Assembly (NCBI GenBank): GCA_965235115.1
Contig: OZ249436.1
Location: forward strand, 64,728,001-64,792,000
Direction of reading: 5' to 3'
DNA length: 64,000 nucleotides
DNA from: Laetmonice hystrix
Lineage: Eukaryota
Part shown: in pieces, positions 3,704 through 64,000 of the stretch
Numbering within the stretch: the stretch's first letter is position 1
Layout of the letters: every line of letters starts with the position of its first letter
Program-made: the position numbers and the translations under genes
The notes under the pieces: model-generated
The model's input: the letters and a program-made list of their open reading frames with translations, nothing else
Told to the model about the DNA's origin: nothing
Databases searched by the model: none

Positions 3704-4899
3704 TATAAAAAAATTGGAGACCTCAATACAATCATTTTTGATCAGAGATATTTCTATAATCTACCAACTTGTCACATCATATTAGCCAACTTGGTCTATT
3801 AAGTGGCCTGCATGGCCCCAGTTCCTCAACGCTTAAATTCTTGTTTAGGCACTCGGAACGCCGACGCTGCTTCTGATTGGCTGTTTCTAGGTCATATCCA
3901 GAGGCGAACCAGGCAAAGTCTTGAATTTATTATACCTTTGCACGAAATAACGAGCGCTGATTGGCTGAGCTACTAGTGTAATAAAAATATCTGTATTACC
4001 CCTGTCTAATTTCTCAACATGCCTATCCTTCTCGAATTGTCTACGGTAGAGGCAAACCAGTCTCTTCTTCACCTGCGAGCAAACCAGATATTCTAACTCT
4101 GCAAAGTCCGATACAGGCTTATAGTGAGCTCCAGCAAAGAGAAATGTTAACCACCATTAATTCGCATGGTATTGTGGAGATCCCGGTCCCCCTAAGTCCA
4201 CCCCCTACTTGTCCTGTATGATCCATTTTCATCCCTTAGGCTCCCAACCATAATGTAGGTACGAGATTCTAAAAGTGCTTTTTGACAAACACGTACATGA
4301 GCCAGACAGAACATTTGAATGTTTAATGATTACTGAAAATAGGAATCGCTTAATTTGCATGGAGACCTCGATAACAGTTAACTGGCTCTTCAAACTGTCG
4401 GGTTCTGTGGCCTGTCTGAAAATTGCTTTCAGCGAACTCCAACCTTTCCCCAACACTACTTTCAAATATGAAAGTATCAGAAAGAGCTATACTACTTTAT
4501 GTTATCTCCAAATTGGTTTGGGTTTGGTATTTTTTCTATAATGTTTTCATTTCTTCCCACCACCTTTCTCCCTGCTTCTAATGGCGTGTTGTAGCCTACC
4601 AGGGGTTACTGTAGATAAGTAATTTTGGTACCGCGCAAATTTCGTGTATTTTCATTCAGAGGTTCTTGACTTCCCGTAGTCAGAATTCTATATTAGGTTT
4701 CTGAAATATCCGTGTTATGTTTGCGACCGGGCTGCTTGGTTAACATACTCATGACACCAACGATAGAACAACCAGTCAAGGACAAATATCCCTTTCTCTG
4801 AAAAAGGTTCATGTTGTTCCGCAGAGGAACGAAAATTGGTGACAAAAAAGGTTTGACAAATTCAAGACCAGGGCCAAGGTCAGTCAGATAATGACGGTC

Positions 4900-19218: not shown

Positions 19219-20965
19219 TTTTTTTTTTTTTTTCATTCCTTTATTTATACTGAGAAGTTTTCGGTACATATATGTGATACCGGTTTTCAAAACTGCCCAG
19301 TCCCAAAGAAATTACCATTAATCAACTTTACACGGTATAACTTCTTTTAAGTAGATGACGCTAATCAGGAAAACACGAAGAAAAAATTATTATGGTAAAA
19401 ATGAGATGGTAATGCAATGATAATATGTCTACAAGTAGGAGGTTTAATGCAAGGTCTTATCTGTATAAAAAGTGGTTTCATGCCAGTTTGTTCTTTAACC
19501 TCTCCTTTTGTCTACGTTTAAAACGTTCAATGGTTGTTATCTGCTTATCGATGGGATCTAAGTTGTTCCATAGGTATCCTCCTCTGAAACAAACGCTTTT
19601 GGTGAAAAGAGCATTTTTGGGATGCTGTACAATCAGAGTTTTATGATCATGAAGCCTGGTATGAATTTCTCTATTGTCAACATAGTCTGGGTCATTGCTT
19701 CGATGGAACATTAAGGTTAATAAGTGTGAATCTCTCCTGTCTTTTAAAAGATTGAGTTTGGCCTTTCGGTGGACATCTAGGGTACCTGTTATTTGAGGGA
19801 GTCTAAAGCACAGTTTAAGTCCTCTGTTTTGAATGCGTTGCAATTTGTCCAGTAGTTGCACGTTTGTACCACTATATAAGACATCACCATATTCGATATA
19901 CGGAAGGACCTTGGATTTATAAACCTGGAGACAAGCAAAGTCAGTGAGGTAAGGACGTAGTTTGTTTAAAAGATATAGTTTATGACTAGCTGATTTAATT
20001 ATATTTTTAGTGTGGGCCACGAAGGACAGCGATTTATCTAAGGTTACGCCCAGGTACTTGTACTCCTGTACTAAATCTAGTTTTGAGTCACCAATTTTTA
20101 ATTGAGGATCTTGAGTTCGTTTAAGTTTCTGTTGTGTGCCAAAGGTCATGACTTTGGTTTTCTTTGTATTAATGGTAAGACGATTCTCAGCACACCATTT
20201 GGTAATAGCGTTAAGGTCCTGTTGTAACTTGTGTTTAATACTATGGATATCAGGTCCTGACTGGTGAACAGCAGTATCGTCAGCATATAGATTGCTCTTT
20301 GAGTTTTTTATAGCTGCTGACAAGTCGTTTATATAACAAAGAAATAATAATGGTCCTAGGATGGAGCCCTGGGGCACTCCGCACGTGATAGGTAACGGGT
20401 CTGATGTTACATCATTGGCCACTGTACATTGTGTCCTTCCATATAGGTAGTTTTTGAACCATTGAATTGCATTGTCCTTTAAACCCAGGTGTTTCAATTT
20501 CAAGAGTAGAATATTGTGATTTATAGTATCGAACGCTTTTTTAAAATCTATAAATACTGCTACGGTTAACTCAGAATTATTCATTGCGGAGTAGATATCG
20601 TCAGTCAGTTTAGCTATTGTAGAAGTAGTGGAGAACCCTTTCCTAAAACCTGCTTGATTCTTATCTAGAATATTTTTAGCGGTAAGGTGTTCCATAAGCT
20701 GTGAATGTACGATTTTTTCTAGAAGTTTGCCAGGTAAAGGCAAAAGGGATATAGGTCTCAGGTTACCAACATCATCAGGGTTTCCGTCTTTTTGCAAGGG
20801 CACTACCTTCGCGATTTTCCATGCTTGAGGTACAACATTGGTTGTCAGAGATAGGTTAAGTAGAAAAGTTAGTTCAGTAATCAGTGCACTAAAGGCATCT
20901 TTTAATATTTGGGACGACAAGTTAGCGATAGCAGACGACTTGTTCGTATTGATATTTTGAACCAA
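19219..20965 (-). mobile_element. 5'-truncated non-LTR retrotransposon (L2/CR1 group LINE) with 3' UTR, AATAAA and poly(A) tail
   Basis: RT ORF 19478-20965. On the minus strand, AATAAA at 19240-19245 is followed by A15 at 19219-19233, and a stem-loop lies at 19262-19282. No endonuclease domain (truncated). Confidence 0.9.
19478..20965 (-). CDS. LINE ORF2 reverse transcriptase domain and C-terminus (495 codons, stop-free, no true start)
   Basis: Motifs LRPISLLPLPGKLLE, QAGFRKGFST, FIDFKKAFDT, GVPQGSILGPLLFLCYIND, LYADDT, YKYLGVTLD. Confidence 0.93.
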   Translation of the reverse strand: MVQNINTNKSSAIANLSSQILKDAFSALITELTFLLNLSLTTNVVPQAWKIAKVVPLQKDGNPDDVGNLRPISLLPLPGKLLEKIVHSQLMEHLTAKNILDKNQAGFRKGFSTTSTIAKLTDDIYSAMNNSELTVAVFIDFKKAFDTINHNILLLKLKHLGLKDNAIQWFKNYLYGRTQCTVANDVTSDPLPITCGVPQGSILGPLLFLCYINDLSAAIKNSKSNLYADDTAVHQSGPDIHSIKHKLQQDLNAITKWCAENRLTINTKKTKVMTFGTQQKLKRTQDPQLKIGDSKLDLVQEYKYLGVTLDKSLSFVAHTKNIIKSASHKLYLLNKLRPYLTDFACLQVYKSKVLPYIEYGDVLYSGTNVQLLDKLQRIQNRGLKLCFRLPQITGTLDVHRKAKLNLLKDRRDSHLLTLMFHRSNDPDYVDNREIHTRLHDHKTLIVQHPKNALFTKSVCFRGGYLWNNLDPIDKQITTIERFKRRQKERLKNKLA

Positions 20966-24550: not shown

Positions 24551-24729
24551 GTCCGCTGGACCTGAATTCTCTGGTTATGCAAGTCCTAGGTCGTCAACTT
24601 CGTGATATAAGAACATATAATTAAGAAAATACAATTAATGGATTAGGGTTAAGGTTAGCATTTGGGATAGCATTATGAGAAAATACAACATCGCGGACTT
24701 CAAATCCTAGGAATACAGGTCCGCCGGAC
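24551..24729. mobile_element. Small degenerate foldback element with central GGTTAG-like core
   Basis: GTCCGCTGGACCTGAATTC (24551) vs GAATACAGGTCCGCCGGAC (24711-24729) are inverted with about 16/19 identity. The centre reads GATTAGGGTTAAGGTTAG. Confidence 0.45.
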
Positions 24730-25219
24730 TTATACTTCAGGGATAGCAGACCTATCTACTTGGTGGGTACGGCCCTTTGTGCACACTCCTGTTGACTTAT
24801 ACTTCAGGGATAGCAGACCTATCTACTTGGTGGGTATGGCGCTTTGTGCACACTCCTGTTGACTTATACTTCAGGGATAGCAGGCCCATCTACTTGGTGG
24901 GTACGGCCCTTTGTACACACTCCTGTTGACTTATACTTCAGGGATAGCAGGCCCATCTACTTGGTGGGTACGGCCCTTTGTGCACACTCCTGTTGACTTA
25001 TACTTCAGGGATAGCAGGCCCATCTACTTGGTGGGTATGGCCCTTTGTGCACACTCCTGTTGACTTATACTTCAGAGATAGCAGGCCCATCTACTTGGTG
25101 GGTATGACCCTTTGTACACACTCCTGTTGACTTATACTTCAGGGACAGCAGGCCCATCTACTTGGTGGGTATGGCCCTTTGTGCACACTCCTGTTGACTT
25201 ATACTTCAGGGATAGCAGA
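24727..25219. repeat. 67-bp minisatellite, 7 full copies plus a partial copy
   Basis: GACTTATACTTCAGGGATAGCAGGCCCATCTACTTGGTGGGTAYGGCCCTTTGTGCACACTCCTGTT repeated with period 67. Confidence 0.97.
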
Positions 25220-27186
25220 ATGCCTTGGTTTTTGCATTTGAAGCCATAAGCCACGTCTACAACACAAAAATTGAGCTGCAAAAATGTCCAATGACGACGT
25301 TGTGCGGTGCCTAGCATTCATTCAGGACTGCTTTACAGCTGCAGACCACAGCACTCTTCCGTTGAATTTGATTTTTTGTTCTATTCTTAGTGGTTAATAC
25401 AATACAAACAGTCTGGGTCTTATGTGTGGCATAAAAAAGTGGCGGTACTGCAATGAGTAGGAACCACTCGAAATGTATAAAAACAAAAAAGCAACTGCTT
25501 TTCCACTTTCGATTCTCTGGTTTATGTGCTGACTGCAGACGTAAACCACATTGCATGGTTTTTACAAATGATCTGGGACTGACACGCCATGAATAGTAAT
25601 AATTTATCAATCACAGACATGTAAATGTTGTGCGTTAATGATGATGGCAGTAGTGTGTCTATTGGAGCCAAGGGACTTGCTTCACGCTTCTGATACTTTT
25701 AAAAGAGTTATAGCGTTAAACGTGCATTTTTGACATATTTTACTGTTGGGCTGGAGACCAACAGCACGCTCAGAGCTTGTAAGAAAGAACGTGATTGGTT
25801 GAGAATCTATTGACCAATCATATCAACATATCGCGCATGTCAGCATATCAGCATATTAACCAATCGGGTGGCGCCTTTCATTACGTGCTCAGAATGCACT
25901 AGCAGAATGGTCGTAGTGTTGAGTTTTCAACTCAACTTGGTAAGCCTTTTTCTGATTTGTTAGTTATTATTTATGAAAGAAAATAGTGTCTTAGATATGA
26001 TATTTTCAAAGTAGAACAGGGGTTAAACATGATTTCCCCAGATCACAATACTCGGTCCAAGTGCTGGGATCTGGGGTCACACACAGTGGCGCCGTATAAG
26101 AACAATAATAGTGATATTGAACTGAACAAATTGCTTTGGGAAATGAAAGTTTTAAGAATATGTGCCGGAACAAGAAGCCAACGTCTACTATTTATACTGC
26201 CTTAAATAAGAAAGTACAATGCATAGAAGAAAAGTTGATGAAAGCCCCTTTGAAAGGCATGCTCAGAGGAATTATTATGGCCAGAACAGAGGGTGTGATG
26301 TTGAAACGGGTGGTCATAATATCCATACACCTCAGTCGGTGCCCCTTTACAGCGGGAGTGATTTTGCTTGGTTGAATGTTCATTCAATGCCTTTATAATG
26401 GAGGATAAATATAACATATTATTTATTATAAATATTTTGGTGAGACGAGTCAAGGATATTTTTATGTTGCATACAGTGTGAGACTGTTAGGTTTTGGTCG
26501 CGACGGTGACGAAGGATGCGCAGTACGTGTCGGGAGAGTCGTCTTATTAAAACAGGGTGGTCTCATCAAACTGCTGGGTGCACCAATGTGAGCGTGTGAT
26601 TGATTAGATGATGCATTTTACCAGGCATGTTCAGAAGGCCGTCACCAGGGCAAGAACACATTTGTTGTCACCCATTCTGTCAGTACTCGGCCAGGGAAGT
26701 AATTCTGATCCACCCAGTCGCTGCGTGCACGGAAATAGCGGCGAGGATGGCGATTATAATGTGGGATGATGATGACTGAGTATAATGATGAGGATGATGA
26801 TGACTAATGCAAACCCCTGGTCGCCTCTCAGGATATCCCTGCCCTACCCTGTTGCCGAGCCCCACGCACAGGGGAAGTACTTAGAGCCTTGTAGCTTTGA
26901 TGCTAATTGAGGCAGTTTCCCACCCAACACCTGCCATAGTGCATCTGCCAGGGCAGCATTCACCTCCTGCCAGGAGCACCTCACGCGCACGTAGCTTGAG
27001 AACAGCGTTCTAGGCATTAATTCCCAGCAGTGTTCGATCTGTCTGGGGGGGGGGGGGGGCGTCCTCTCCCCGCCACCTCCAAATGAGAGAGAGATTTTCT
27101 TTTTCTTTGGGGGGGGGGGGGGGCAGCCAGAAAGGAAAATACAGGCCTGGCCCAGTCCTCAGAACCGTTGGATAACAGATTCTGCC

Positions 27187-27758
27187 TCAGAGTGAGGGAG
27201 TGCGTAATTTGTGTTTAACGCCCAGTGAGCAGTGTTTTACTGTCTCAGAGTGGGTGAGTGATTGCGTAGTTGGTGTTTAACGCCCAGTGAGCAGTGTTTT
27301 CCTGACTCAGAGTGAGTGAGTAAGTGAGTGGGTAGTTGGTGTTTAACGCCCAGTGAGCAGTGTTTTCCTGACTCAGAGTGAGTGAGTGAGTACGTAGTTT
27401 GTGTTTAACGCCCTGTGAGCAGTGTTTTCCTGACTCAGAGTGAGTGAGTGGGTAGTTGGTGTTTAACGCCCAGTGAGCAGTGTTTTCCTGACTCACAGTG
27501 AGTGAGTGAGTGTGTAGTTGGTGTTTAACGCCCAGCTATGAGCAGTGTTTTCCTGACTCAGAGTGAGTGAGTGAGTGGGTAGTTGGTGTTTAACGCCCAG
27601 TGAGCAGTGTTTTCCTGACTCAGAGTGAGTGAGTGGGTACGTAGTTGGTGTTTAACGCCCAGCTGTGACCAGTGTTTTCCTGACTCAGAGTGAGTGAGTG
27701 GGTAGTTGGTGTTTAACGCCCAGCTGTGAGCAGTGTTTTCCTGACTCACAGTGAGTGA
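27187..27758. repeat. Compound minisatellite, 9 units of ~58-67 bp containing a variable (GAGT)n tract
   Basis: GTTTAACGCCCAGTGAGCAGTGTTTTCCTGACTCAGAGT(GAGT)n recurs 9 times. Period varies with GAGT number. Confidence 0.93.
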
Positions 27759-31629: not shown

Positions 31630-31733
31630 CTAACTAACTAACTAACTAACTAACTAACTGACTGACTGACTGACTGACTCAGTGACTGACTGACTGACTG
31701 ACTGGCTGACTGACTGACTGACTATAACTAACT
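31630..31733. repeat. Compound tetranucleotide microsatellite (CTAA)n(CTGA)n
   Basis: Direct reading of the sequence. Confidence 0.95.
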
Positions 31734-32243
31734 GCCCCATATTACCAAGGCCGTTTCTAACAATATAAGCATAACGTATATCAACAACGTCCACCTGCAC
31801 TCTTTGCAGAGCGCCAACTATCAAACATTTTGAGTATATCCCAGGGCAATGACACGCACTTTAAGATCAATACGCAGTTACCTGGTCCCTCCATCAAGCA
31901 GGGGCCAGCCACGGATCTCAGATTGTTAGATGTAAAGCACTCTTCGAGAGTAATATAAACACGAAAAAAAGTTGCCTGTCTTATCATTTGTAAAAATATG
32001 CTTTTCCGAACTCTAGCTCTGATCTCCGTACCGAAACACCGATGTCCACCTCCAAAATGATCGCACATATTTGCCTTGAATGGTGAGCTTTAAGGGGACG
32101 CAGTCTGGGCTGACCATTTACTAATCTCTCATTCTGAAAGGACACATGTGGCCCGCTGGCTAGAAACACGACATCTCTAACTTGAACCGCCTTCTCCGGA
32201 GAGCGTTATAGATATAAGAATCAATGATAGGCCTATAGAACTT

Positions 32244-32386
32244 GAATTACTTATATTTCCTTTTTAAATTTGTCATGTTGGATAGGGGGTTTTCATACTT
32301 TTGAAAGTGACGAAACACGGAATTGAAACGCATTACCTAATGGCAATGAGAATTTAAGAGCATTGCAAATATTCCATTGATCCTTC
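32244..32386 (+). other. 143-bp segment also found at both junctions of the 41-46 kb triplication (putative template)
   Basis: GAATTACTTATATTTCC...CCATTGATCCTTC matches 42845-42987 and 44450-44592. One substitution was seen (TAATGGCAATG vs TAATGACAATG). Confidence 0.92.
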
Positions 32387-35300: not shown

Positions 35301-36996
35301 ATCACAGGTAGTTACCAAGATGCAGGACAGCGTTCCAGCCTTGTCGAGCTGGCTGGAGTTGGCAGCTCTGGTGCTTTCCGTTAGTGCCTGTTTTCTTGCG
35401 CACAGCCCATCATTGAGCACGGCGTATTGCATAAACCTTCACTTTCAAGAGAAGCAACTAGCACAGAGATGGCTCAATCACTTCCCACCTCCAATTGCAA
35501 TGTGTAAATTTAACGTTGGTCTTTTTAATGCGGTTAACAGCTCCAGCAGACGCGTCACCGTGGCTGGTTGAATTCCATGGTTACCCAAACATTTCTATCA
35601 CATTGGGGCGGATTGTGTGTTCCTTGGGTCAAGTAAACTAATTTGCAATACAACATATTGATGGAGGCTGATGTGGAAACAACAAGGCTATTAATGAAAT
35701 CCATCATCTTCATGCCACACCACCATATTTGAAGCCTTTCAGCTATCGAAAAGTCACGAGAACTTTTGAAGAAGAATGTGAATGTCTTGTTTGAGCATCT
35801 ATTAAAACATGTTCTTTGTAAATAATGTTTTTTATTATTGGCCCGCAGTGCGTTCCGCGTGAATCTAGTACGGCTTATTCTAGCATGGTAATTCTAATAG
35901 CAACCGGGCAGCATCATTTTATTAAAAAGGCGCAGGTGAAATGCACATTGCATAGAGAGTCAGGGAGAAGAGGTGACAACAGACGATGATCTAACCCCAG
36001 CAGGCGTGCCAGAGCCTGGCGATAGTAAAAGGCAGACGTATTACGTTCGGACAAAGACATTCTTTTTCTGTATATCTTAATGTATCCTGTACATTTAGCA
36101 GATTCGGAGAACGTTATCAGCGCATAATGACACTTTAGACGCCTGATCTACAGTCATAGCCGTTATCTTAGCTAAGGGCGGACGCACTCAAAGCGGGTGC
36201 TGAATCGACCTTAACGAGCAGGGGAAACAGGGACATCTGCTGCTTTCTGTATGATCCGCTGCGTGCTATCTGACGGGGCCTGTCTCTGAGCAGACTACCT
36301 AGCAGAAACAAACCATGCAATACAAAGCTTTTTCTTCCCCTAGCAAGTCTGGTTGTGCACCACACCATGATGTTTGTAATTGCCTCAAGGCATGTTCTTT
36401 GTACGCGGGCATCTTCTCAGAAACATCGCCAGCTGGTCCCGTAATACTACAACCGTAGCTACAACCGTATCTTAACCCGTTAACTATAGGGTTCCTAGGT
36501 CCGGTCCACAAGTACTACGTGGATTGAATTAATCGCCATCAGCACGGATATCGATATGAAATAAGTAAAGAGTGCTGTTGGAGTGGAGGGGCTTTGGTCG
36601 GATTAGGTCGGATTATCGGTCTTTATTAAGGCACTGCTCGCTGTCCGCGGTGCGGGTGAGATGGGGGCATAATCAGCCACTGCTGGCTGATGTGGTGAAT
36701 GGGTGGTTCAGATTAGCCAAAGTTATGAATGGGTATAGGTCAGCAACTCTCAGCTACAGTAATCGTGAATTGACAGCTGTAAATGCGATGTTGTGCCATT
36801 GTCCGCCGATGTTGTGAATGGACACTGTACACAGTTTCTTTGGACACTACCAGCAGAAGATGAAGAAACGAGTTCACCCGCTATCAGCACGGGCCACATT
36901 GATCAGCAGATGTTGCGACAGGATCTTCAGCCCTTCAGCGTGGGTCCAACCACGTCCAACTGTTCGGTGAAGGCGTTGTTTGGTCACTGTCATCAG

Positions 36997-37344
36997 GGCC
37001 CCGTTTCATAACTAACAGCGAACGCACACTAATAACGCACAAGTGCGTTATTAGCGAACGATGAAGATAGCGGTCGTTGCGTTAAAGTGTTTCATAAGCA
37101 TTTGCGTAATTGTCCCCGGTCTCCCCTACTTTTCAATTTAAGTATCCACGTTACGTATTTTCGTAGAATTGCCAGCTTTATATTTCATAATGGGAAGTTA
37201 GCGCACACCCTTATAGGTGCGCGTTAATTAAATGGTTTTAGAGGCAGACAACGCGCGCTATGCGTTGCGTTGCGTTATTAGTTATGCAACACATTAACCT
37301 CAAATAAGGCTATTTGCGCATCTGCGTTAATAACGCAGCTGCGT
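36997..37344. mobile_element. PIF/Harbinger-type MITE, copy 1 (right TIR missing)
   Basis: Highly similar to 57503-57873 and begins CAG|GGCCCCGTTTCATAACTA. It ends at GCAGCTGCGT, where the 35-bp array begins. Confidence 0.8.
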
Positions 37345-38092
37345 GGTGTGGTGATCAGTTTGTACGTTGGCTGTTATCTGGTGTGGTGAACGCGTTGTTA
37401 GGCCACTGTCGGCTAGTGTGGTGAACGCGTTGTTCGGCCACTGTCGGCTGGTGTGGTGAACGCGTTGTTCGGCCACTGTCGGCTGGTGTCGTGAACGCGT
37501 TGTTTGGTCGCTGTCGGCTGGTGTGGTGAACGCGTTGTTCGGCCGCTGTTATCTGGTGTGGTGAACGCGTTGTTCGGCCACTGTCGGCTGGTGTGGTGAA
37601 CGCGTTGTTCGGCCACTGTCGGCTGATGTGGTGAACGCGTTGTTCGGCCACTGTCGGCTGGTGTGGTGAACGCGTTGTTCGGCCACTGTCGGCTGGTGTG
37701 GTGAACGCGTTGTTCGGCCACTGTCGGCTGGTGTGGTGAACGCGTTGTTCGGCCACTGTCGGCTGGTGTAGTGAACGCGTTGTTTGGCCGCTGTCGGCTG
37801 GACGTGTGGTGAACGCGTTGTTTGGTCGCTGTCGGCTGGTGTGGTGAACGCGTTGTTTGGTCGCTGTCGGCTGGTGTGGTGAACGCGTTGTTCGGCCACT
37901 GTCGGCTGGTGTGGTGAACGCGTTGTTCGGCCACTGTCGGCTGGTGTGGTGAACGCGTTGTTCGGCCACTGTCGCCTGGTGTAGTGAACGGGTTGTTTGG
38001 TCGCTGTCGGCTGGTGTGGTGAACGCGTTGTCCAGCCACTGTCGGCTGGTGTAGTGAACGCGTTGTTTGGTCGCTGTCGGCTGGTGTGGTGA
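37345..38092. repeat. 35-bp minisatellite, about 21 copies (CTGTCGGCTGGTGTGGTGAACGCGTTGTTCGGCCA)
   Basis: Period 35. The 270-aa and 234-aa minus-strand ORFs are 35-residue repeat artefacts of three units. Confidence 0.97.
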
Positions 38093-38838
38093 CCAGGTTA
38101 GGCCGACCACTTGACACGAGAAGCGGCGGCGGTACACGGGCACGTGCTCCAGCTGGCCGCTCACCATGTTAGCGTCCCATTTCCGCGAGCCGTCGTTAAT
38201 TCACTGCAACACGCCCAGCCCCTCTCCGCTACACGCCGACGTTTCCGCGCTTCATTAGCTCGTATCTTCCCCCAAGCTCTAACCCTTAACACTCGAGGGT
38301 TGCACTGAATATGGCTGGGACTTGTGTTTAACCGATCCGTTATCCATCTAAACATGTGTACGTGATGTTGATGGGCACTGCAGATTTATTCTTCTCCATA
38401 TCGCCCATTAAGGACGGAAGGAAAATGTTTCCGTTAACCGACCTAATATTATATCATGCGGCCGGACAGACGAATATTAAGGCTACCTAATCACATTAAT
38501 GTATTATGTCCCTTTTTGCGAAAGGAGCATTTCTGTGAATTCACAAGACAAAGATGACGTAACTAATCTGGTAAACAGTATCGTATAACTAAATGCTCGG
38601 GTCTATCAGATCGAAGTACACGATTAATTTAAGATGATTGGTTGCTTTGACTAATTAGTTAATGTTTATATCCATAATTTTTTTTATTTTACCTTGACTT
38701 TGGGCGCCAGAACGGGTAACACCTGTATTAACGAAAGGTGCCCCATCGAACGTGACCAAGATTCGACTTATTTCACAGACGCCGATACGAGGTAAATTTC
38801 ATGAGAAGCATAAACATGGCCAACTGAGTAACTCTTTA

Positions 38839-39090: not shown

Positions 39091-41940
39091 ATCACAAAGA
39101 AAGTGGCTTGCGTCAGAGACTATAAAACAGGGGTCTATACAAAAGTGTTCAAGCTTACATCTAATTTTAAGGATATTTTAAGGATATGCATGACATAAAC
39201 GCAAAAAATGCTCTGATTAAACCTCATGCATAATCTAGCATAATAGGTACGTCAATCGTCATAATCGTGAAATAGCAACCAGAAATAGGCCTAGAGCTGG
39301 GCCAGTGTTAAATTCTATATTACCGAAGGTTTATAGAATAAATCCATCATGGTCCGAACGTATGGAACAGATTAGATGCTCAACTCAGAAACATAGAAGA
39401 TAAAGATGCATATATAAATGCGCGTTAAAAACATATATCTTTGGTCTATTTTTACCCACGTGACTTTTACCTTATCCCATCCCACATCAAATTAGCACTA
39501 GGGCACCCGGGGTCCTTTTCTACAGAACATATCAATTTTAACAAGACAGCTGGGAGGCCACCATGCAAAGCTCTCCCAGCTAGATCCGCCACTGTTGTTT
39601 TCGTTTTGTGTACAAGGTAAGGTAACAGGGTCAGGGTCACTGTTATACATAGGCTCCGGAACGAAGGTATAGCGGGGCAAGCAGTTTCACCCCCTCCCCG
39701 CCCCACCCACTCTGAAGCGTGTAGGCGGAGCATCGGATTTATTCTTGCTCTTTTAACTGAGTACCTCACAACCTGCCCACCCCCATAGAAGTATCGGATT
39801 TGGTCTTGCATCCAAGCAGCTGGGAATATATCCGGTGCCTATGTTATACCCCTCAACAATAACCCATTAGGTCACTAAAATGCGAGAAACATGCGCCAGA
39901 AGGGCTCTTTTTTATTTTTTTTTAAAGTGGCCTTATGTCATGTAACTCAAGTTGAGATATCTGCGCGACGAGTCATGTAAGATGCGTACTGTAGCCATTG
40001 CCATCGGTGCAAGAAAGGTTCCGAAAAGAAGCATTCTATGTCGTTGGTATATGGCATTCAACAAATTGCCATAAAATAATCTTTAATAATAAAATTCAGA
40101 GAACAGTCTAAATGTTAATGGAGGCATGACTCTAAGATCAAGCAGTCAATCATCAACAAAATATGAGATGAATACTTGATTTGCGAAATGAAATGGGAAT
40201 TTTATTAATTCAGATATATGCTGCTCGGCCTCGGCCGACATTAGTCTATCACATTAGTGCAAATATCAAGTTCAAGTTATGTGATATGAAACGTCTCTTT
40301 TTTTAAATGACTTAAATTTGAATTCCACACATACCAAGCCTATCTATAATATATATGCACGTATTATGGGAAAGATAGCGGTTTGCAAAGTGGGAGATGA
40401 AGTATTTTAGTGCGATGTTGATGCTTCTGAATTGACAATAATCCTGAACTGTATTTGCACCCTCAGGCCATGGCAGACTCTCAAAGTGCCTACCAGGTTC
40501 CCGACTGCCTGCGCGCAAGATAAGGTCAAGAGTTCCAGGCAGACCTTCACAGCTGCCGCCTCTCATCAAGCGGCCTCTCGCTCGACCAATTGCCGTCAAA
40601 AATGAGCAACCCAGAAAAAAGGCATTAAATTCAGAGAGGTTAATTATACACTCCCACAAAAACTTACATGTGGTCAAAGTACAGTGAAACCCCCCCCCCC
40701 CCCCTGCGGGAAGGTCGTCAAACTGATCGGAAACTAATAAGGTAAGGTCATGAACTACATTCAGATTTCTCGGAAAGAAACATTACCTTTGACTATCTGT
40801 ATAGTTTTTCCATGCATGCCTTCTCCCTTCTCCTCCTATTCTGACCCCCATTGATTATTTGACAGCTAAAGTAGGCCCTACTCGACTAATGTCCCTTATC
40901 TGCCGAAGGACGCAAAGGGGTTCTCAATGCAGGTCATATCTCAAGGGCCTGTAGTCGGGTACATTAATTGTATACTAAGTAGGTTACCCCACCCCCTCGT
41001 CATTCCCGGTCAACCCACCAATATATACAAACCAAGGGTTATCCGGTCTGTCAAGTCTAACAATCCCATTTGAGTTGTAGTCATTTCGGAATCCATGTAA
41101 ATTTGTGTCTTGCTGCTAAAAATACAATTGCTGGAACTTAACTGTAATTTTGCTGGTGCCGCTGGAGTCACTACTGTTTACATCAGCCGCGTGTCTATGT
41201 ACACTTACATTTGCCTGGCTGGGTTACCAATACTATAATAACACATTGTAGGTTTTCCTTTTCACGCTTGGACGGTGGCCTGATTTTTCATCAGAGTATC
41301 AGGGTTGTCTTTTAACTGTTAATGACAGCACACCCTTTGATTTAGAATTCAAATAAGTCCAGGAAGATTGGTCTGAATTTCGTTAGTGTGACCTAAAGTA
41401 ATTATGAATTGTGAAAGCTGAGGCCTATTACCCTAGCAATTGGTTTAAAGAGCTTCGAGCAATTGAAGCCTGTCATTTCGCAATACGCGACTAGGAGGGT
41501 CGAGGCGAGTACACAGGGTGGCGCCCGGCTTTATAAGGGAGGGGGGCATTAGATTATTTCATGAGGAATTCAAGAAGCCTGCGATGACAATATTGTAAGG
41601 AGCATTGCCCTCTTTTTAAACATTACCGCAAGCAAGGACGTAAGTAGCGAGAAAAAAATTAATAGCTGCAATTCAACAAGGAACGCCTACAGTCTTAGGT
41701 CTCCCATGGTTACTGCAGCCAAGAACAAAAGGGTCACGTGTTACGTCGGTGTGTGATGTATTACATGGGAACTGAGTGGAATTGGTTCAGGTTTTACTAT
41801 GACCTACAGCTTTATCCTTCAACATATTAGGTAGAAGGACAGAAACTTGCCCCACACTTGCGATCTCCAGAGAAGTCAACCAAATTAAATTCCATTTCAT
41901 TAATCGTGATTCAGTAATCCGAGTCCGAGAGAGGCCATCG

Positions 41941-42095
41941 CTAACAATGACCTAACTTTACCTGTTTCATCCCTAACAATGACCTAACTTTACCTGTTTC
42001 ATCCCTAACAATGACCTAACTTTACCTGTTTCATTCCTAACAATGACCTAATTTTACCTGTTTCATCCCTAACATTGACCTAATTTTACCTGTTT
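41941..42095. repeat. 32-bp minisatellite (~4.8 copies), repeated at 43546-43700 and 45151-45305 by the triplication
   Basis: CTAACAATGACCTAACTTTACCTGTTTCATCC with period 32. Confidence 0.93.
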
Positions 42096-42409
42096 GTTTC
42101 ACATTAAACGAGGAAGCAGGCAATGAGTGCATTTCTCATTTTACTGATATTTTCCCTGGACTTGGCTTAGTTGTTTGCCATAACGAGCTAATCTTCAATT
42201 TCCATTTTACTCAAACCAAATTAAGCTAATAAAAGTCTTGCTCAGACCCATGGTCTCCCGGATGTGGCATCACCTACTTCCGGACAGAGGGCGCTTCTAC
42301 CTAGGCGACTTGTTCGGGAAGTGGTTCGGCGTGAACGTGTACGGGGTACTAGTCATAATAGGACTTGCCTTTGGTGGAACGATCGGCTAGACATCCACTG
42401 TGGTCAAGT

Positions 42410-42448
42410 CAAGAATATTGGGATGTATTCCCCATCCCAATATTCTTG
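42410..42448. mobile_element. 39-bp perfect hairpin flanked by a 7-bp direct repeat (also 44015-44053 and 45620-45658)
   Basis: GTCAAGT|CAAGAATATTGGGATG-TATTCCC-CATCCCAATATTCTTG|GTCAAGT. Confidence 0.6.
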
Positions 42449-45400
42449 GTCAAGTGAACACCCTGAGGACAACCTATTATAGAGACAGGGGGTTCATACA
42501 CGCACAGACGCCAACATCCGGCTGCCAGATATTAGAACTATAGGGGAGTCCCGCATAAAGACCCCCCCCCCCCCCATAGAGAGACCAACCTGTAATTGGG
42601 ACCATTTTGGCTCATAGGGTTGATCCATTGCGGTTTTCGTGTCACGCGACAATTGGCGACAAGCCATCTGATGACAATCTGCGACAAACTGCTGATGTAC
42701 GCTCGTCATGTTGCAGCTGTCGCAGGAAGGGGCGAAATGTCGCCTGATGTTTTTGTAGTTGTTCAAATTTTACAATATACGTCATCAGAATCATCTCAAG
42801 CCTGAGAAGCTTGTCGCCGAATACTTATACTTATGAATACTTATGAATTACTTATATTTCCTTTTTAAATTTGTCATGTTGGATAGGGGGTTTTCATACT
42901 TTTGAAAGTGACGAAACACGGAATTGAAACGCATTACCTAATGACAATGAGAATTTAAGAGCATTGCAAATATTCCATTGATCCTTCGTAGTGTGACCTA
43001 AAGTAATTATGAATTGTGAAAGCTGAGGCCTATTACCCTAGCAATTGGTTTAAAGAGCTTCGAGCAATTGAAGCCTGTCATTTCGCAATACGCGACTAGG
43101 AGGGTCGAGGCGAGTACACAGGGTGGCGCCCGGCTTTATAAGGGAGGGGGGCATTAGATTATTTCATGAGGAATTCAAGAAGCCTGCGATGACAATATTG
43201 TAAGGAGCATTGCCCTCTTTTTAAACATTACCGCAAGCAAGGACGTAAGTAGCGAGAAAAAAATTAATAGCTGCAATTCAACAAGGAACGCCTACAGTCT
43301 TAGGTCTCCCATGGTTACTGCAGCCAAGAACAAAAGGGTCACGTGTTACGTCGGTGTGTGATGTATTACATGGGAACTGAGTGGAATTGGTTCAGGTTTT
43401 ACTATGACCTACAGCTTTATCCTTCAACATATTAGGTAGAAGGACAGAAACTTGCCCCACACTTGCGATCTCCAGAGAAGTCAACCAAATTAAATTCCAT
43501 TTCATTAATCGTGATTCAGTAATCCGAGTCCGAGAGAGGCCATCGCTAACAATGACCTAACTTTACCTGTTTCATCCCTAACAATGACCTAACTTTACCT
43601 GTTTCATCCCTAACAATGACCTAACTTTACCTGTTTCATTCCTAACAATGACCTAATTTTACCTGTTTCATCCCTAACATTGACCTAATTTTACCTGTTT
43701 GTTTCACATTAAACGAGGAAGCAGGCAATGAGTGCATTTCTCATTTTACTGATATTTTCCCTGGACTTGGCTTAGTTGTTTGCCATAACGAGCTAATCTT
43801 CAATTTCCATTTTACTCAAACCAAATTAAGCTAATAAAAGTCTTGCTCAGACCCATGGTCTCCCGGATGTGGCATCACCTACTTCCGGACAGAGGGCGCT
43901 TCTACCTAGGCGACTTGTTCGGGAAGTGGTTCGGCGTGAACGTGTACGGGGTACTAGTCATAATAGGACTTGCCTTTGGTGGAACGATCGGCTAGACATC
44001 CACTGTGGTCAAGTCAAGAATATTGGGATGTATTCCCCATCCCAATATTCTTGGTCAAGTGAACACCCTGAGGACAACCTATTATAGAGACAGGGGGTTC
44101 ATACACGCACAGACGCCAACATCCGGCTGCCAGATATTAGAACTATAGGGGAGTCCCGCATAAAGACCCCCCCCCCCCCCATAGAGAGACCAACCTGTAA
44201 TTGGGACCATTTTGGCTCATAGGGTTGATCCATTGCGGTTTTCGTGTCACGCGACAATTGGCGACAAGCCATCTGATGACAATCTGCGACAAACTGCTGA
44301 TGTACGCTCGTCATGTTGCAGCTGTCGCAGGAAGGGGCGAAATGTCGCCTGATGTTTTTGTAGTTGTTCAAATTTTACAATATACGTCATCAGAATCATC
44401 TCAAGCCTGAGAAGCTTGTCGCCGAATACTTATACTTATGAATACTTATGAATTACTTATATTTCCTTTTTAAATTTGTCATGTTGGATAGGGGGTTTTC
44501 ATACTTTTGAAAGTGACGAAACACGGAATTGAAACGCATTACCTAATGACAATGAGAATTTAAGAGCATTGCAAATATTCCATTGATCCTTCGTAGTGTG
44601 ACCTAAAGTAATTATGAATTGTGAAAGCTGAGGCCTATTACCCTAGCAATTGGTTTAAAGAGCTTCGAGCAATTGAAGCCTGTCATTTCGCAATACGCGA
44701 CTAGGAGGGTCGAGGCGAGTACACAGGGTGGCGCCCGGCTTTATAAGGGAGGGGGGCATTAGATTATTTCATGAGGAATTCAAGAAGCCTGCGATGACAA
44801 TATTGTAAGGAGCATTGCCCTCTTTTTAAACATTACCGCAAGCAAGGACGTAAGTAGCGAGAAAAAAATTAATAGCTGCAATTCAACAAGGAACGCCTAC
44901 AGTCTTAGGTCTCCCATGGTTACTGCAGCCAAGAACAAAAGGGTCACGTGTTACGTCGGTGTGTGATGTATTACATGGGAACTGAGTGGAATTGGTTCAG
45001 GTTTTACTATGACCTACAGCTTTATCCTTCAACATATTAGGTAGAAGGACAGAAACTTGCCCCACACTTGCGATCTCCAGAGAAGTCAACCAAATTAAAT
45101 TCCATTTCATTAATCGTGATTCAGTAATCCGAGTCCGAGAGAGGCCATCGCTAACAATGACCTAACTTTACCTGTTTCATCCCTAACAATGACCTAACTT
45201 TACCTGTTTCATCCCTAACAATGACCTAACTTTACCTGTTTCATTCCTAACAATGACCTAATTTTACCTGTTTCATCCCTAACATTGACCTAATTTTACC
45301 TGTTTGTTTCACATTAAACGAGGAAGCAGGCAATGAGTGCATTTCTCATTTTACTGATATTTTCCCTGGACTTGGCTTAGTTGTTTGCCATAACGAGCTA

Positions 45401-45855
45401 ATCTTCAATTTCCATTTTACTCAAACCAAATTAAGCTAATAAAAGTCTTGCTCAGACCCATGGTCTCCCGGATGTGGCATCACCTACTTCCGGACAGAGG
45501 GCGCTTCTACCTAGGCGACTTGTTCGGGAAGTGGTTCGGCGTGAACGTGTACGGGGTACTAGTCATAATAGGACTTGCCTTTGGTGGAACGATCGGCTAG
45601 ACATCCACTGTGGTCAAGTCAAGAATATTGGGATGTATTCCCCATCCCAATATTCTTGGTCAAGTGAACACCCTGAGGACAACCTATTATAGAGACAGGG
45701 GGTTCATACACGCACAGACGCCAACATCCGGCTGCCAGATATTAGAACTATAGGGGAGTCCCGCATAAAGACCCCCCCCCCCCCCCATAGAGAGACCAAC
45801 CTGTAATTGGGACCATTTTGGCTCATAGGGTTGATCCATTGCGGTTTTCGTGTCA

Positions 45856-46257
45856 CGCGACAATTGGCGACAAGCCATCTGATGACAATCTGCGACAAAC
45901 TGCTGATGTACGCTCGTCATGTTGCAGCTGTCGCAGGAAGGGGCGAAATGTCGCCTGATGTTTTTGTAGTTGTTCAAATTTTACAATATACGTCATCAGA
46001 ATCATCTCAAGCCTGAGAAGCTTGTCGCCGAATACCGTAAAAAATATTCAAACAAGTTTAAAGACATTCAGCGACAGCCTTGACGCAGCTTGTCGCCCTA
46101 CCTTGATTTTGTTGCAGAGAGCTGCCAGTAGCCCCAAGAGGCCGTACGAGGTGATCAAATGGAATGTTATAAACTGTCGCAGGAAGGCGCCAAAATGGTT
46201 GGAAATCTTGTCCCAGGACGCCATAAATTGGCTTCTCGCATGTCGCTAATTGTCGCG
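45856..46257. mobile_element. Foldback element with GCGACA-rich arms; complete only in triplication copy 3
   Basis: CGCGACAATTGGCGACA ... TGTCGCTAATTGTCGCG (1 mismatch). Copies 1 and 2 are cut at GCCGAATAC. Degenerate inverted similarity extends somewhat further out. Confidence 0.65.
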
Positions 46258-46316
46258 CGGCAAAATACCGCAGCCATTTTGAACTCAGAAAATGGTCTTA
46301 TTGATATAGTCATATA

Positions 46317-47024
46317 TCGGGTGGGCCACAAAAAACTGGAACACTCTTTTCTTCACTATAACTTCTTCAATTTTATCCCAATGTCATAATATTTTACACA
46401 TGATATTTGGTTATTTGTGGTCTGTGGTACCAATTTCAGATAAATAATTCAAAATGTCTAAAAATAGTGCCATTTTTAAAACCTCATGTCAAAAATTGCA
46501 ATGCCGGACCATGGTAGTTTACGTGGTGCCGAACGTCTTAGGCAGGGTTGGGTCCACTGTGTCTAATCACGTGACATCTTTCAATCAAATTCTCCTGCCA
46601 AATCACAGGTGATCGTTCAGACTCCGTTTTGACACATTTTATCAGAATAAAACTAAGTTTGATTAAATTATCGTTTGTCAGGGCGGAGGCCGGCAAGAAG
46701 TGGGCTGAGCTCCATCAACATCACACCTGCCGAAACCCAGATGACAAGCTCTGTTACCATCACTGAACACCATGCAGAAAATTTAGAAAAACAACCTGTT
46801 CTGTGTGAAAGTTTCTGATGAAATGTGTCAACACGGTATTGCAATTTTTGACCTGCAGTTTTAAAAAATGGCGCTATTTTTAGACGTTTTCACCTACTTA
46901 TCTGAAATTTGTACCACAGGCCTCAAATAACCAGACGATATCATGTGTAAAATATTATTCCGTCGGGATAAATTATATTGTAGAAGTTATAGTCAAGAAA
47001 AGATTGTTCCAGGTTTTTTCTGCC
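46317..47024. mobile_element. Mariner-type long-TIR non-autonomous element, copy A
   Basis: TA|TCGGGTGGGCC left end. Inverted arms of about 200 bp (GTGCCATTTTTAAAAC / GTTTTAAAAAATGGCGC). The right tip is partly deleted. Same family as 57012-58079. Confidence 0.8.
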
Positions 47025-57011: not shown

Positions 57012-58079
57012 TCGGGTGGGCCCCCCAAATAAACTGAAACACTCTCTTCTTGACTATAACTTTAACCATTTTATCCTAATGTCATAATATTTTGCACATG
57101 ATAATGATCTAGTTATTTGGGGCCTGTGGTACAAATTTTAGACAAATAGGTCAAAACTCTGTTTTGACGCATTTTATCAGAATGAAACTAAATTTAATGA
57201 AATTAGTCACTATTCAGGGTGGAGGCCGGCAAGAAGTGGGCTGAGCTCAGTCATCATCACAACTAGCACCTGGCAGTAACGCAGGCTGCCAAACCCCAGA
57301 TCACAAGCTCTGTTGTCATCACTAAACACATTGCAGAAAATTTAGAAAATCAACCTGTGAAAGTTTCTGATGAAATGTGTCAAAACAGAGTTTGGCCGGC
57401 CACCTGTTTTTGGCAGTTGGCATTTGAATGTCAGGTGTCACATCATTCAGACACAGTGGAACCAACCGTGCCTAAAACCTGCGGCACCACTTAAATACCC
57501 TGGGCCCCGTTTCATAACTAACAGCGAACGCACACTAATAACGCACAACTGCGTTATTAGCGAACGATGAAGATAGCGATCGTTGCGTTGAAGTGTTTCA
57601 TAAGCATTTGCGTAATTGTCCCCGGTCTCTCCTACTTTTCAATTTAAGTATCCACGTTACGTATTTTCGTAGAATTGCCAGCTTTATATTTCATAATGGG
57701 AAGTTAGCGCAGACCCTTATAGGTGCGCGTTAATTAAACGATTTTAGAGCCAGACAACTCGCACTATGAACGCATAGTGCGTTGCATAGTTATGCAACAC
57801 ATTAACCTCAAAAGAGGCTATTTGCGCATCTGCGTTAATAACGCAGCTGCGTTATTAGTTATGAAACGGGGCCCGGGTCCGGCATTGCAATTTTTAACAT
57901 GAAGTTTTTAAAATGGCACTATTTTTTTTAGACGTTTTGACCTATTTATCTGAAATTTGTACCACAGACCCCAAGTAACCAGATGATCCCATGTGCAAAA
58001 TATTATCATATTGGGCAAAAAAAACTGTAGAAGTTTTAGTCAAGAAAAGAGTGTTCCAATTTCTTTTTTGCCTGCCCGA
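57012..58079. mobile_element. Mariner-type long-TIR non-autonomous element, copy B, carrying a nested Harbinger MITE
   Basis: TA|TCGGGTGGGC ... GCCTGCCCGA|TA. Shares the internal GGAGGCCGGCAAGAAGTGGGCTGAGCTC segment with copy A. Confidence 0.82.
57503..57873. mobile_element. PIF/Harbinger-type MITE, copy 2 (complete, 371 bp)
   Basis: CTG|GGCCCCGTTTCATAACTA ... TAGTTATGAAACGGGGCC|CGG: 18-bp perfect TIR and a 3-bp CWG-like TSD with one mismatch. Subterminal palindromes TAATAACGCA..TGCGTTATTA. Confidence 0.85.
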
Positions 58080-60256: not shown

Positions 60257-60518
60257 GGTTTAACGAGATATTACAACATTGAAAAGGTTTAACGAGATAT
60301 TACAACATTGGAAAGGTTTAACGAGATATTACAACATTGGAAAGGTTTAACGAGATATTACAACATTGGAAAGGTTTAACGAGATATTACAACATTGGAA
60401 AGGTTTAACGAGATATTACAACATTGGAAAGGTTTAACGAGATATTACAACATTGGAAAGGTTTAACGAGATATTACAACATTGGAAAGGTTTAACGAGA
60501 TATTACAACATTGGAAAG
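60257..60518. repeat. 29-bp minisatellite, 9 nearly perfect copies
   Basis: GGAAAGGTTTAACGAGATATTACAACATT with period 29; no spacers. Confidence 0.97.
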
Positions 60519-62400: not shown

Positions 62401-62955
62401 AACAATCTTGTTATCAGAAGGTGGCACGGTGTTCCTTATAACGGGATTACTGCGACGATCCGACTAGGACACATTTCCGCCGACTACCACCCTCCAACCC
62501 AGCTCGTGCCTCCCGGATTGACCTAAGCGATTTCTATCATATACACACAGGAATATGGGTCATAATTATCGTCAACGCCAGCTGAAATTCCGACGCGGTG
62601 TATTTTGCCGTTGTTATGTATAGCCTTACTTTGATAAGAACCAAAATTCTTAATTTCAAATAGATATTATTTTTCACCCCATGTTCTCGATATGTACGCA
62701 TCGTCTTGGCTCTGAGGAAATCCTCGTGTCCTTGCAGACGCGGATTAGGCCCTACATGGATCAAATGTAATCTGAGTATAAGCGAAGAATCTTGGACGGT
62801 CTAGTATGACTGGTGGGAGCCGGCTTACGGTGGGTGTGGCCTGCATAGTAATGTTTGTGCGGGGTGAATGTATACGGTCAGATTCATGATCACCTACCTC
62901 GGGTTCGGACACAAAGGGTTTCTCATGTGGATTGTTGAACCAGAGACAACACGGA

Positions 62956-64000
62956 GTAATACCGGGCTGACCTCCTCACTCGTGGATAGAGTAATACCGG
63001 GCTGACCTCCTCACTCGAGGATACAGTAATACCGGGCTGACCTCCTCACTCGAGGATACAGAAATACCGGGCTGACCTCCTCACCAGTCGAGGATACAGT
63101 AATACCGGGCTGACCTCCTCACCAGTCGAGGATACAGTAATACCGGACTGACCTCCTCACTCGAGGATACAGTAATACCGGGCTGACCTCCTCACTCGAG
63201 GATACAGTAATACTGGGCTGACCTCCTCACTCGAGGATACAGTAATACCGGGCTGACCTCCTCACTCGAGGATACAGTAATACAGGGCTGACCTCCTCAC
63301 CAGTCGAGGATACAGTAATACCGGGCTGACCTCCTCACTCGAGGATAGAGTAATACCGGGCTGACCTCCTCACTCGAGGATACAGTAATACCGGGCTGAC
63401 CTCCTCACTCGAGGATACAGAAATACCGGGCTGACCTCCTCACCAGTCGAGGATACAGTAATACTGGGCTGACCTCCTCACCAGTCGAGGATACAGTAAT
63501 ACCGGGCTGACCTCCTCACCAGTCGAGGATACAGTAATACCGGGCTGACCTCCTCACCAGTCGAGGATACAGTAATACCGGACTGACCTCCTCACTCGAG
63601 GATACAGTAATACCGGGCTGACCTCCTCACTCGAGGATACAGTAATACTGGGCTGACCTCCTCACCAGTCGAGGATACAGTAATACCGGGCTGACCTCCT
63701 CACTCGAGGATAGAGTAATACCGGGCTGACCTCCTCACTCGAGGATACAGTAATACCGGGCTGACCTCCTCACTCGAGGATACAGTAATACCGGGCTGAC
63801 CTCCTCACTCGAGGATACAGTAATACCGGGCTGACCTCCTCACTCGAGGATAGAGTAATACCGGGCTGACCTCCTCACTCGAGGATAGAGTAATACCGGG
63901 CTGACCTCCTCACTCGAGGATACAGTAATACCGGGCTGACCTCCTCACTCGAGGATACAGTAATACCGGGCTGACCTCCTCACTCGAGGATACAGTAATA
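62956..64000. repeat. 35/38-bp minisatellite, at least ~29 copies, running off the window end
   Basis: GTAATACCGGGCTGACCTCCTCACTCGAGGATACA, with a +CAG variant (TCACCAGTCGAGG). Confidence 0.97.

What the first reader, a model, noticed from the sequence alone, without database searches (positions are those of the whole stretch)
41384..46035. Tandem triplication whose junctions contain a 143-bp insert templated from 10 kb upstream
Seen: unit-insert-unit-insert-unit. The insert (42845-42987, 44450-44592) matches 32244-32386 at about 142/143, in the same orientation. The right join has TTC microhomology (donor CCTTC vs unit flank ATTTC-GT). The unit's right break falls inside a foldback element that is intact only in copy 3. 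Known: templated junction inserts with microhomology are hallmarks of replication template switching (FoSTeS/MMBIR) or Pol-theta repair. Inference: one composite junction formed once and was then copied, by rolling-circle synthesis on a chimeric circle or by unequal crossover. Near-identity implies a very recent event.
Basis: partly seen in the sequence, partly recalled or inferred. Interest (0 to 1): 0.7.

Follow-up and report, generated by a model that had tools for sequence, protein, structure and literature searches.

The report
Tandem triplication with template-switch junction
A 1.44-kb non-coding stretch of an animal chromosome stands three times in a row, and each joint carries the same scar: a 19-base stutter plus 144 bases copied from 10.6 kb upstream. 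This is a clear but ordinary footprint of error-prone, microhomology-primed DNA repair or replication followed by copy-number expansion.

Summary
A 1,441-bp unit (41384-42824) occurs three times at a period of 1,605 bp. Two identical 164-bp junctions separate the copies, and each contains 144 nt (not 143) copied in direct orientation from 32243-32386, with one mismatch.

- **Donor:** single-copy in the 627-Mb genome, so it is not a mobile element.
a 19-nt stuttered filler at the left join. The TTC microhomology at the right join holds only if one T was lost.
- **Right break:** it lies mid-way in a dispersed MITE-like element. Other family copies run through the break, so copy 3 keeps the ancestral state.
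- **Reads:** k-mer contigs from three runs of one sample branch at the four assembled breakpoints, so the junction is not an assembler invention. Unit depth is about 2x the flank, not 3x. That fits a 3+1 heterozygote, or a true 2+2 with the copy number overcalled.

Best reading: one serial template-switch event (FoSTeS/MMBIR-like, with a Pol-theta-like stutter) made a duplication with a composite junction, and homology-driven unequal exchange or slippage then added a copy. This is a new instance of a known mutational class. No gene or function is involved, and interest is modest.

The parts
32243..32386 (+). Donor of the junction insert: single-copy, contiguous with its own flanks
   Evidence: 144-nt match, 143/144, same orientation. 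Only three genome matches (donor plus the two inserts).
41384..42824 (+). Unit copy 1 (1,441 bp). Its left edge continues into the ancestral left flank. Its last ~211 bp (42614-42824) are the left half of a truncated MITE-like element.
   Evidence: Read contigs from the left flank stop at 41413, k-1 bases into the unit, which marks a graph branch exactly at 41383|41384.
42825..42843 (+). 19-nt filler TTATACTTATGAATACTTA. With its flanks it reads [GAATACTTAT][ACTTAT][GAATACTTAT][GAATTACTTAT], a stutter between the unit end GAATAC and the donor start GAATTACTTAT.
   Evidence: In one search, 19 of 19 filler bases are covered by >=7-nt matches to +-50 nt around the three ancestral breakpoints, against a shuffle mean of 9.1 (P about 0.02).
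42844..42987 (+). Templated insert 1, a copy of 32243-32386 with one G>A difference at 42944
42988..42988 (+). Single G between insert and unit. Either an orphan base, or part of a TTCG match to the flank 41379-41382 with loss of one T.
   Evidence: BLAST extends the repeat to 41379 with a 1-nt gap.
42989..44429 (+). Unit copy 2, identical to copy 1. Truncated MITE half at 44219-44429.
   Evidence: no difference between 41384-42988 and 42989-44593.
44430..44593 (+). Second junction (filler 44430-44448, insert 44449-44592, G 44593), identical to the first
   Evidence: Read contigs run from the unit through the filler into the insert with 0 mismatches (X3 record 18, 43610-44592; X1 record 3, 44167-44478). 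A 144-nt contig equals exactly the part shared with the donor.
44594..46035 (+). Unit copy 3 (1,442 bp, with one extra C in the poly-C run at 45772-45786). It continues into the ancestral right flank.
   Evidence: Read contig X2 record 14 ends exactly at 46035.
45825..46273 (+). Intact MITE-like dispersed repeat with terminal inverted repeats at 45840-45875 and 46238-46272. The unit's right break (46035|46036) lies about 15-20 nt from its centre.
   Evidence: Six family copies elsewhere in the genome align continuously across 46035|46036.

Best explanation
This is a real structural variant in non-coding DNA, made in two steps.

**Step 1 (one event).** A 3' DNA end ending in ...GCCGAATAC, broken or stalled in the middle of a MITE-like repeat, left its template.
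- It re-primed at an imperfect microhomology (GAATAC against GAATTAC) 10.6 kb behind.
- It stuttered there, leaving the 19-nt filler, and then copied 144 nt.
- It left again and re-primed at TTC(G), 1.44 kb behind the original break, with a 1-nt slip.
- It then carried on.

The product was unit-junction-unit, a tandem duplication with a composite templated junction. This is serial template switching of the FoSTeS/MMBIR kind. The short stutter is the kind of scar that polymerase theta leaves.

**Step 2.** Misalignment of the 1.6-kb repeats during recombination or replication (unequal sister or homologue exchange, or slippage) added a further unit plus junction. That gives three copies on the assembled haplotype.

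**Status in the sequenced animal.** It probably carries about four unit copies per diploid genome. That fits heterozygosity of three copies against one, so the variant is young and still segregating.

**Shown and inferred.**
- Shown: the anatomy, the single origin of the junction, the donor's uniqueness, the ancestral state, and the junction's presence in reads.
- Inferred: the enzymes, the order of switches, the second step and the zygosity.
For: - **Single origin of the junction:** the two 164-bp junctions and the units on either side of them (copies 1 and 2) are identical.
- **Donor:** single-copy and in the same orientation.
- **Filler:** tiled by local breakpoint sequence, 19/19 at k=7 against 9.1 in shuffles, P about 0.02.
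- **Joins:** imperfect microhomology at the left join, 3-4 nt at the right join.
- **Ancestral state:** MITE family copies run through the break, so copy 3 plus its flank is ancestral and copies 1 and 2 are truncated.
- **Reads:** de Bruijn contigs of three runs branch at 41383|41384, 42843|42844 and 42987|42988 or their equivalents, and contig X2 record 14 ends exactly at 46035, the equivalent of 42824|42825. They carry the unit-filler-insert path at depths comparable to the genome.
- **Depth:** unit depth is about 1.5-2.75x the flank. Heterozygous SNP depths give about 3.3-5 haploid equivalents.
- **Enzyme available:** the genome encodes a Pol-theta-like gene. One exon's best PDB hits are Pol theta, E 1.9e-17.
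- **Literature:** tandem duplications with templated insertions are documented outcomes of TMEJ and MMBIR (PMC7368036; PMC8421209 and PMC6902434).
Against: - No single read spanning 41.3-46.1 kb could be examined, and only contigs from one sample were available. Three copies, rather than two, therefore rests on the assembly.
- Depth is about 2x, not 3x.
- A 144-nt insert from 10.6 kb away is longer and more distant than typical Pol-theta templated inserts, which are drawn from the immediate vicinity (PMC7368036). The enzyme assignment is therefore mixed or uncertain.
- Microhomologies are short and imperfect. At 3 nt they are not individually significant.
- Local hairpin potential at the break is not significant (z = -1.4). 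The role of the MITE as the trigger is therefore only suggestive.
Confidence: 0.68

Rival explanations
1. The junction is real, but the assembler overcalled the copy number. The animal carries a homozygous simple duplication (2+2), not a triplication.
For: Unit k-mer depth is about 2x the flank in all three runs, and insert and junction depths fit about two junctions per diploid genome. This is equally what 2+2 predicts. The three copies are identical apart from a homopolymer length, so nothing in the sequence anchors the middle copy.
Against: A genome of 627 Mb in 35 contigs implies long-read assembly. Such reads usually span 4.7 kb and count 1.6-kb repeats correctly. Heterozygous sites lie immediately left of the unit (41100, 41171, 41201). 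Two different haplotypes therefore exist here, which makes 3+1 natural.
Confidence: 0.17
2. Rolling-circle origin. A 1,605-bp extrachromosomal circle (unit plus 144-nt insert plus filler) formed once and was copied as a concatemer. It then recombined into the chromosomal unit, giving the array in one integration.
For: There is an exactly constant period and identical junctions. The array phase is as expected if a concatemer integrated by homology within the unit.
Against: It needs more steps: excision or copying of the unit, chimeric circularisation, rolling-circle synthesis and re-integration. No other copy or circle-derived fragment exists elsewhere in the genome. The sequence product is indistinguishable from duplication plus unequal exchange, which is the commoner route.
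Confidence: 0.07
3. An older array kept identical by gene conversion (concerted evolution), not a recent event.
For: Tandem copies can be homogenised. The insert differs from the donor by 1/144, whereas the copies differ by 0 in about 3,000 bp.
Against: Depth suggests the variant is heterozygous and so still segregating. The single mismatch is within the local heterozygosity seen in the flank (three sites in about 100 bp), or it may be an error of the repair synthesis.
Confidence: 0.05
4. The 144-bp piece is a mobile element that inserted independently between pre-existing repeats, or the whole 1.6-kb period is a transposon or Helitron array.
For: The region is rich in repeats and MITEs.
Against: The donor has no other copy in the genome. 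The two inserts share identical filler and joins. There are no target-site duplications. The unit occurs nowhere else.
Confidence: 0.02

Closest known systems
FoSTeS / MMBIR complex copy-number gains (serial replication template switching; e.g. PLP1 and MECP2 locus rearrangements, PMC6902434, PMC4352052, PMC8421209)
   Same: A copy-number gain whose junction holds a templated insertion taken in cis from a few kb away. Joins lie at short or imperfect microhomology ('microhomeology'). All segments are in direct orientation.
   Different: The scale is much smaller: a 1.4-kb unit against tens to hundreds of kb. The triplication is direct with two identical junctions, so the third copy came from a second, homology-driven step. 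It did not come from the inverted-repeat-mediated DUP-TRP/INV-DUP route. It was seen in a wild-type animal assembly, not in a disease cohort.
Polymerase-theta-mediated end joining scars (templated insertions; tandem duplications in C. elegans brc-1/brd-1 mutants, PMC7368036; HELQ and TONSL papers PMC8654963, PMC13031629)
   Same: The short filler is made of pieces found within tens of bases of the break ends. There are iterative stutter, 1-nt slips and 1-4-nt microhomology. The tandem duplication is of kb scale.
   Different: The main insert is 144 nt long and comes from 10.6 kb away. Typical TMEJ inserts are short and come from the immediate vicinity. Dependence on Pol theta cannot be tested here.
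Unequal crossing-over or replication slippage in tandem repeats (minisatellite and macrosatellite copy-number change)
   Same: Expansion from two to three copies keeps the period and junction sequence exactly.
   Different: Only three copies, with a known founding junction. This is a possible first stage of a macrosatellite, not an established array.

Membership tests
FoSTeS/MMBIR-type template-switch rearrangement | Junction contains sequence templated from elsewhere, usually nearby in cis | tested here: met
   144 nt = 32243-32386, 10.6 kb upstream, same strand, 143/144. The donor is single-copy.
FoSTeS/MMBIR-type template-switch rearrangement | Microhomology (about 2-5 nt or imperfect 'microhomeology') at each switch | tested here: inconclusive
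   Left switch: GAATAC against GAATTAC (6/7, imperfect) plus stutter. Right switch: TTC, or TTCG with a 1-nt T loss. Both are present but too short to exceed chance individually.
FoSTeS/MMBIR-type template-switch rearrangement | Copy-number gain of the segment between the switch points | tested here: met
   Three copies in the assembly. Read k-mer depth is about 2x the flank.
FoSTeS/MMBIR-type template-switch rearrangement | Arises during replication or BIR from a collapsed fork | not testable with these tools
   The break lies mid-MITE, but the local hairpin is not significant.
[quoted passage not shown] | Short insertions templated from sequence close to the break ends | tested here: met
   The 19-nt filler is fully tiled by >=7-nt matches to +-50 nt of the three breakpoints, P about 0.02.
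[quoted passage not shown] | Inserts are short and local (immediate vicinity of the junction) | tested here: not met
   The main insert is 144 nt from 10.6 kb away. Compare PMC7368036.
[quoted passage not shown] | Organism has Pol theta, and the event depends on it | tested here: inconclusive
   A multi-exon family-A polymerase gene lies at G000:C6:28.54 Mb. One exon's best PDB hits are Pol theta, E 1.9e-17. Dependence is not testable.
Mobile-element insertion | Multiple dispersed copies, defined termini, target-site duplication | tested here: not met
   Neither the donor nor the unit has other copies. No TSD at the joins.
Assembly artefact | Junction absent from raw-read data, or supported by single molecules only | tested here: not met
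   The unit-filler-insert path and all branch points are present in contigs of three runs at k-mer depths of 36-105. All runs are from one sample, so copy number is still open.

The most novel reading that the evidence does not exclude
The array is the first stage of a macrosatellite, born in one step. A chimeric 1,605-bp extrachromosomal circle (unit plus a template-switch insert) was amplified by rolling-circle synthesis and re-integrated by homology. It is caught while still heterozygous in a wild animal.
Probability: 0.07. Interest if true: 0.6.

Novelty: new member of a known kind. Interest (0 to 1): 0.3.

Why it matters
This is a clean natural example of how a complex junction formed by template switching can seed a tandem array. 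Donor, ancestral state and stutter are all still readable, in a wild-type animal rather than a repair mutant or tumour. If it is heterozygous, it is a simple PCR-typable marker of a recent event. It could also serve as a case study for the birth of macrosatellites. It touches no gene, and the mechanism class is well established, so its value is illustrative rather than conceptual.

Tried and rejected
- **High-copy or mobile insert:** rejected. The donor has only three genome matches.
- **Unit as a transposon or Helitron array:** rejected. The unit is found only at this locus, and only its MITE tail and a 39-nt palindrome recur.
- **RNA gene in the window:** no Rfam family reached its gathering score anywhere in the window.
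- **Coding content:** there are no credible ORFs in or near the array. The 90-96-aa ORFs run through the poly-C and MITE part, and the long ORFs at 37355-38167 are minisatellite read-through with no Pfam match.
- **Hairpin-stall trigger:** 120-nt folds around the four breakpoints were not significant at the unit's right break (z = -1.4). They were not significant at the left break or the donor start either. Only the donor's 3' edge gave z = -2.7. The whole MITE folds better than shuffles (z = -3.8), but only its ends pair.
- **Copy number from depth:** only Logan contigs of one sample were available.
- **Earlier scan notes:** only this same finding came up, and a word search found nothing.
Full report
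**1. Observation**

The window belongs to a 627-Mb genome in 35 contigs, at C1:64,728,001-64,792,000. It is an animal-type genome:
- a non-LTR reverse transcriptase ORF (RVT_1, E 2.6e-40);
- many mini- and microsatellites;
- multi-exon Pol-theta-like and Pol-nu-like genes.

Repeat finding and direct comparison show a 1,441-bp unit at 41384-42824, 42989-44429 and 44594-46035, with a period of 1,605 bp. Period 1 and period 2, junction included, are identical over all 1,605 bp. Copy 3 differs only by one extra C in a poly-C run (14, 14 and 15 C).

**2. Junction anatomy**

After the last unit base (...GCCGAATAC, 42824) come three parts:
- a 19-nt filler, TTATACTTATGAATACTTA (42825-42843);
- 144 nt (42844-42987) that equal 32243-32386 on the same strand, with one difference (G at 32343, A in both inserts);
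- a single G (42988), followed by the next unit (TAGTGTG...).

Read with its flanks, the left join is [GAATACTTAT][ACTTAT][GAATACTTAT][GAATTACTTAT]ATTTCC. This is a stutter between the unit end GAATAC and the donor's own GAATTACTTAT. All 19 filler bases are covered by exact matches of 7 nt or more to the +-50 nt around the three ancestral breakpoints. Shuffled fillers average 9.1 covered bases (P about 0.02).

At the right join the donor supplies ...CCTTC. The ancestral left flank reads ...ATTTCGTTAGTG, and the junction reads CCTTCGTAGTG.

**3. Which state is ancestral**

The donor is contiguous with its own flanks and occurs nowhere else in the genome.

Outside this locus the unit has only two kinds of match elsewhere:
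- its last ~210 bp, which belong to a dispersed family at 68-85% identity;
- a 39-nt perfect-stem palindrome.

BLAST of 45780-46320 against seven family loci shows that six of them align continuously across 46035|46036. The element spans about 45825-46273 and has imperfect terminal inverted repeats of ~36 nt. It is therefore MITE-like rather than a full foldback, and the break lies 15-20 nt from its centre.

Copy 3 plus the right flank, and copy 1 plus the left flank, therefore preserve the ancestral single-copy arrangement. The truncated MITE halves and the inserts are derived.

**4. Is it in the reads?**

Only three runs were offered, all from one sample and one study, and all as Logan k-mer contigs. 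They are probably the assembly's own individual, so they are not independent of it biologically. They are independent of the assembler.

The contig ends reproduce the assembled breakpoints:
- Flank contigs stop at 41413, k-1 bases into the unit, in all three runs.
- Unit contigs start at 44594.
- One unit contig (X2 record 14) ends exactly at 46035.
- A 144-nt contig equals exactly the stretch shared with the donor.
- Contigs run from the unit through the filler into the insert without a mismatch (X3, 43610-44592; X1, 44167-44478).

No listed contig bridges the insert-to-unit-start join. It is implied by the branch and by depth in bin 42957-43143.

| Run | Flank depth | Unit depth |
|---|---|---|
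| X1 | 59.5 | 107-125 |
| X2 | 32.1 | 49-63.5 |
| X3 | 52.3 | 104-144 |

- The unit-to-flank ratio is about 1.5-2.75, most often near 2.
- Heterozygous sites at 46407 and 46418 give haploid depths of about 23, 14 and 28. The unit is therefore present at roughly 3.3-5 haploid equivalents, near four and not six.
- In X1 the 144-nt insert contig (depth 105) fits two junctions per diploid genome (about 103 expected) and not four (about 162 expected). X2 is lower, at 35.7.
- The tool warns that contig depth is not a copy number, so this is suggestive only.
- Three heterozygous differences within 41100-41201 show that two distinct haplotypes meet here.
- The simplest fit is three copies on the assembled haplotype and one on the other. 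A true 2+2 with an assembly overcall fits the depth equally well.

**5. Mechanism**

Shown:
- The junction arose once, because the idiosyncratic filler and the mismatch are identical in both copies.
- The insert was copied from a unique site 10.6 kb upstream.
- All three segments are in direct order and orientation.
- The joins use short or imperfect microhomology with slips.

Inferred step 1: a nascent or resected 3' end ending in GAATAC, released in the middle of the MITE, went through the following steps.
- It primed at GAATTAC 10.6 kb behind.
- It stuttered there and copied 144 nt.
- It dissociated and primed again at TTC(G), 1.44 kb behind the original break.
- It then continued, giving a duplication with a composite junction.

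This is the FoSTeS/MMBIR scheme (PMC8421209, PMC6902434). The stutter and 1-nt slip are the type of scar ascribed to polymerase theta (PMC7368036), and the genome encodes a Pol-theta-like gene. The 144-nt distant insert is atypical for TMEJ alone, so I do not assign the event to one enzyme.

Inferred step 2: a second identical junction cannot be made by an independent switch. The third copy therefore came from misaligned homologous exchange or slippage between the 1.6-kb repeats, or, less parsimoniously, from a rolling-circle concatemer.

The MITE as a fragile site is only suggestive:
- The whole element folds better than shuffles (z = -3.8).
- The local hairpin at the break is not significant (z = -1.4).

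**6. Age (inference)**

There are zero substitutions in about 3.0 kb of pairwise comparison. With an assumed 1e-9 to 1e-8 substitutions per site per generation, this bounds the age at roughly 5e4 to 5e5 generations (95%). Gene conversion could extend that bound. Probable heterozygosity argues for a young, segregating allele. The one insert-donor mismatch is within local heterozygosity, or it may be a synthesis error.

**7. Comparison and verdict**

There is no gene, RNA family or credible ORF in the array. This is a well-preserved natural instance of a known mutational class, and possibly a nascent macrosatellite. Novelty is a new member of a known kind, and interest is about 0.3.

Noticed in passing
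window 11340-12650, 24727-25218, 27182-27758, 37344-38099, 60257-60518, 62954-64000: The window is unusually rich in minisatellites, with periods of about 33, 67, 62, 35, 29 and 35 bp. The last one runs off the window end. The 35-bp array at 37344-38099 creates spurious 234-270-aa ORFs with no Pfam match.
   Followed up: partly
window 42410-42448, 44015-44053, 45620-45658: A 39-nt palindrome lies inside each unit: 16-nt perfect arms CAAGAATATTGGGATG / CATCCCAATATTCTTG with a 7-nt loop. It has at least 15 dispersed matches at about 78-95% identity on many chromosomes and both strands, so it looks like a small dispersed hairpin element.
   Followed up: no
window 46311-46500: A very high-copy repeat starts at about 46311-46313, immediately right of the MITE-like element. 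K-mer depth jumps to about 3,000-4,800 and many contigs have loose ends there.
   Followed up: no
window 41936-42095 (and 43541-43700, 45146-45305): Each unit holds an internal 32-bp x 5 tandem repeat (96% matches). Read contigs break there.
   Followed up: no
window 19478-20965 (-): A 495-aa ORF with a reverse transcriptase domain (RVT_1, E 2.6e-40): a non-LTR retrotransposon copy.
   Followed up: partly
window 36996-37344 and 57502-57852: A 350-bp dispersed repeat pair at 94% identity. The first copy abuts the 35-bp minisatellite.
   Followed up: no
G000:C6:28544567-28550859 (-) and G000:C5:2999827-3004606 (+): Two multi-exon family-A DNA polymerase genes. Single exons hit solved Pol theta best (E 1.9e-17) and Pol nu best (E 3.5e-8) respectively.
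   Followed up: partly
window 31630-31734: A compound tetranucleotide microsatellite, (CTAA)n(CTGA)n, lies about 500 bp upstream of the donor segment.
   Followed up: no
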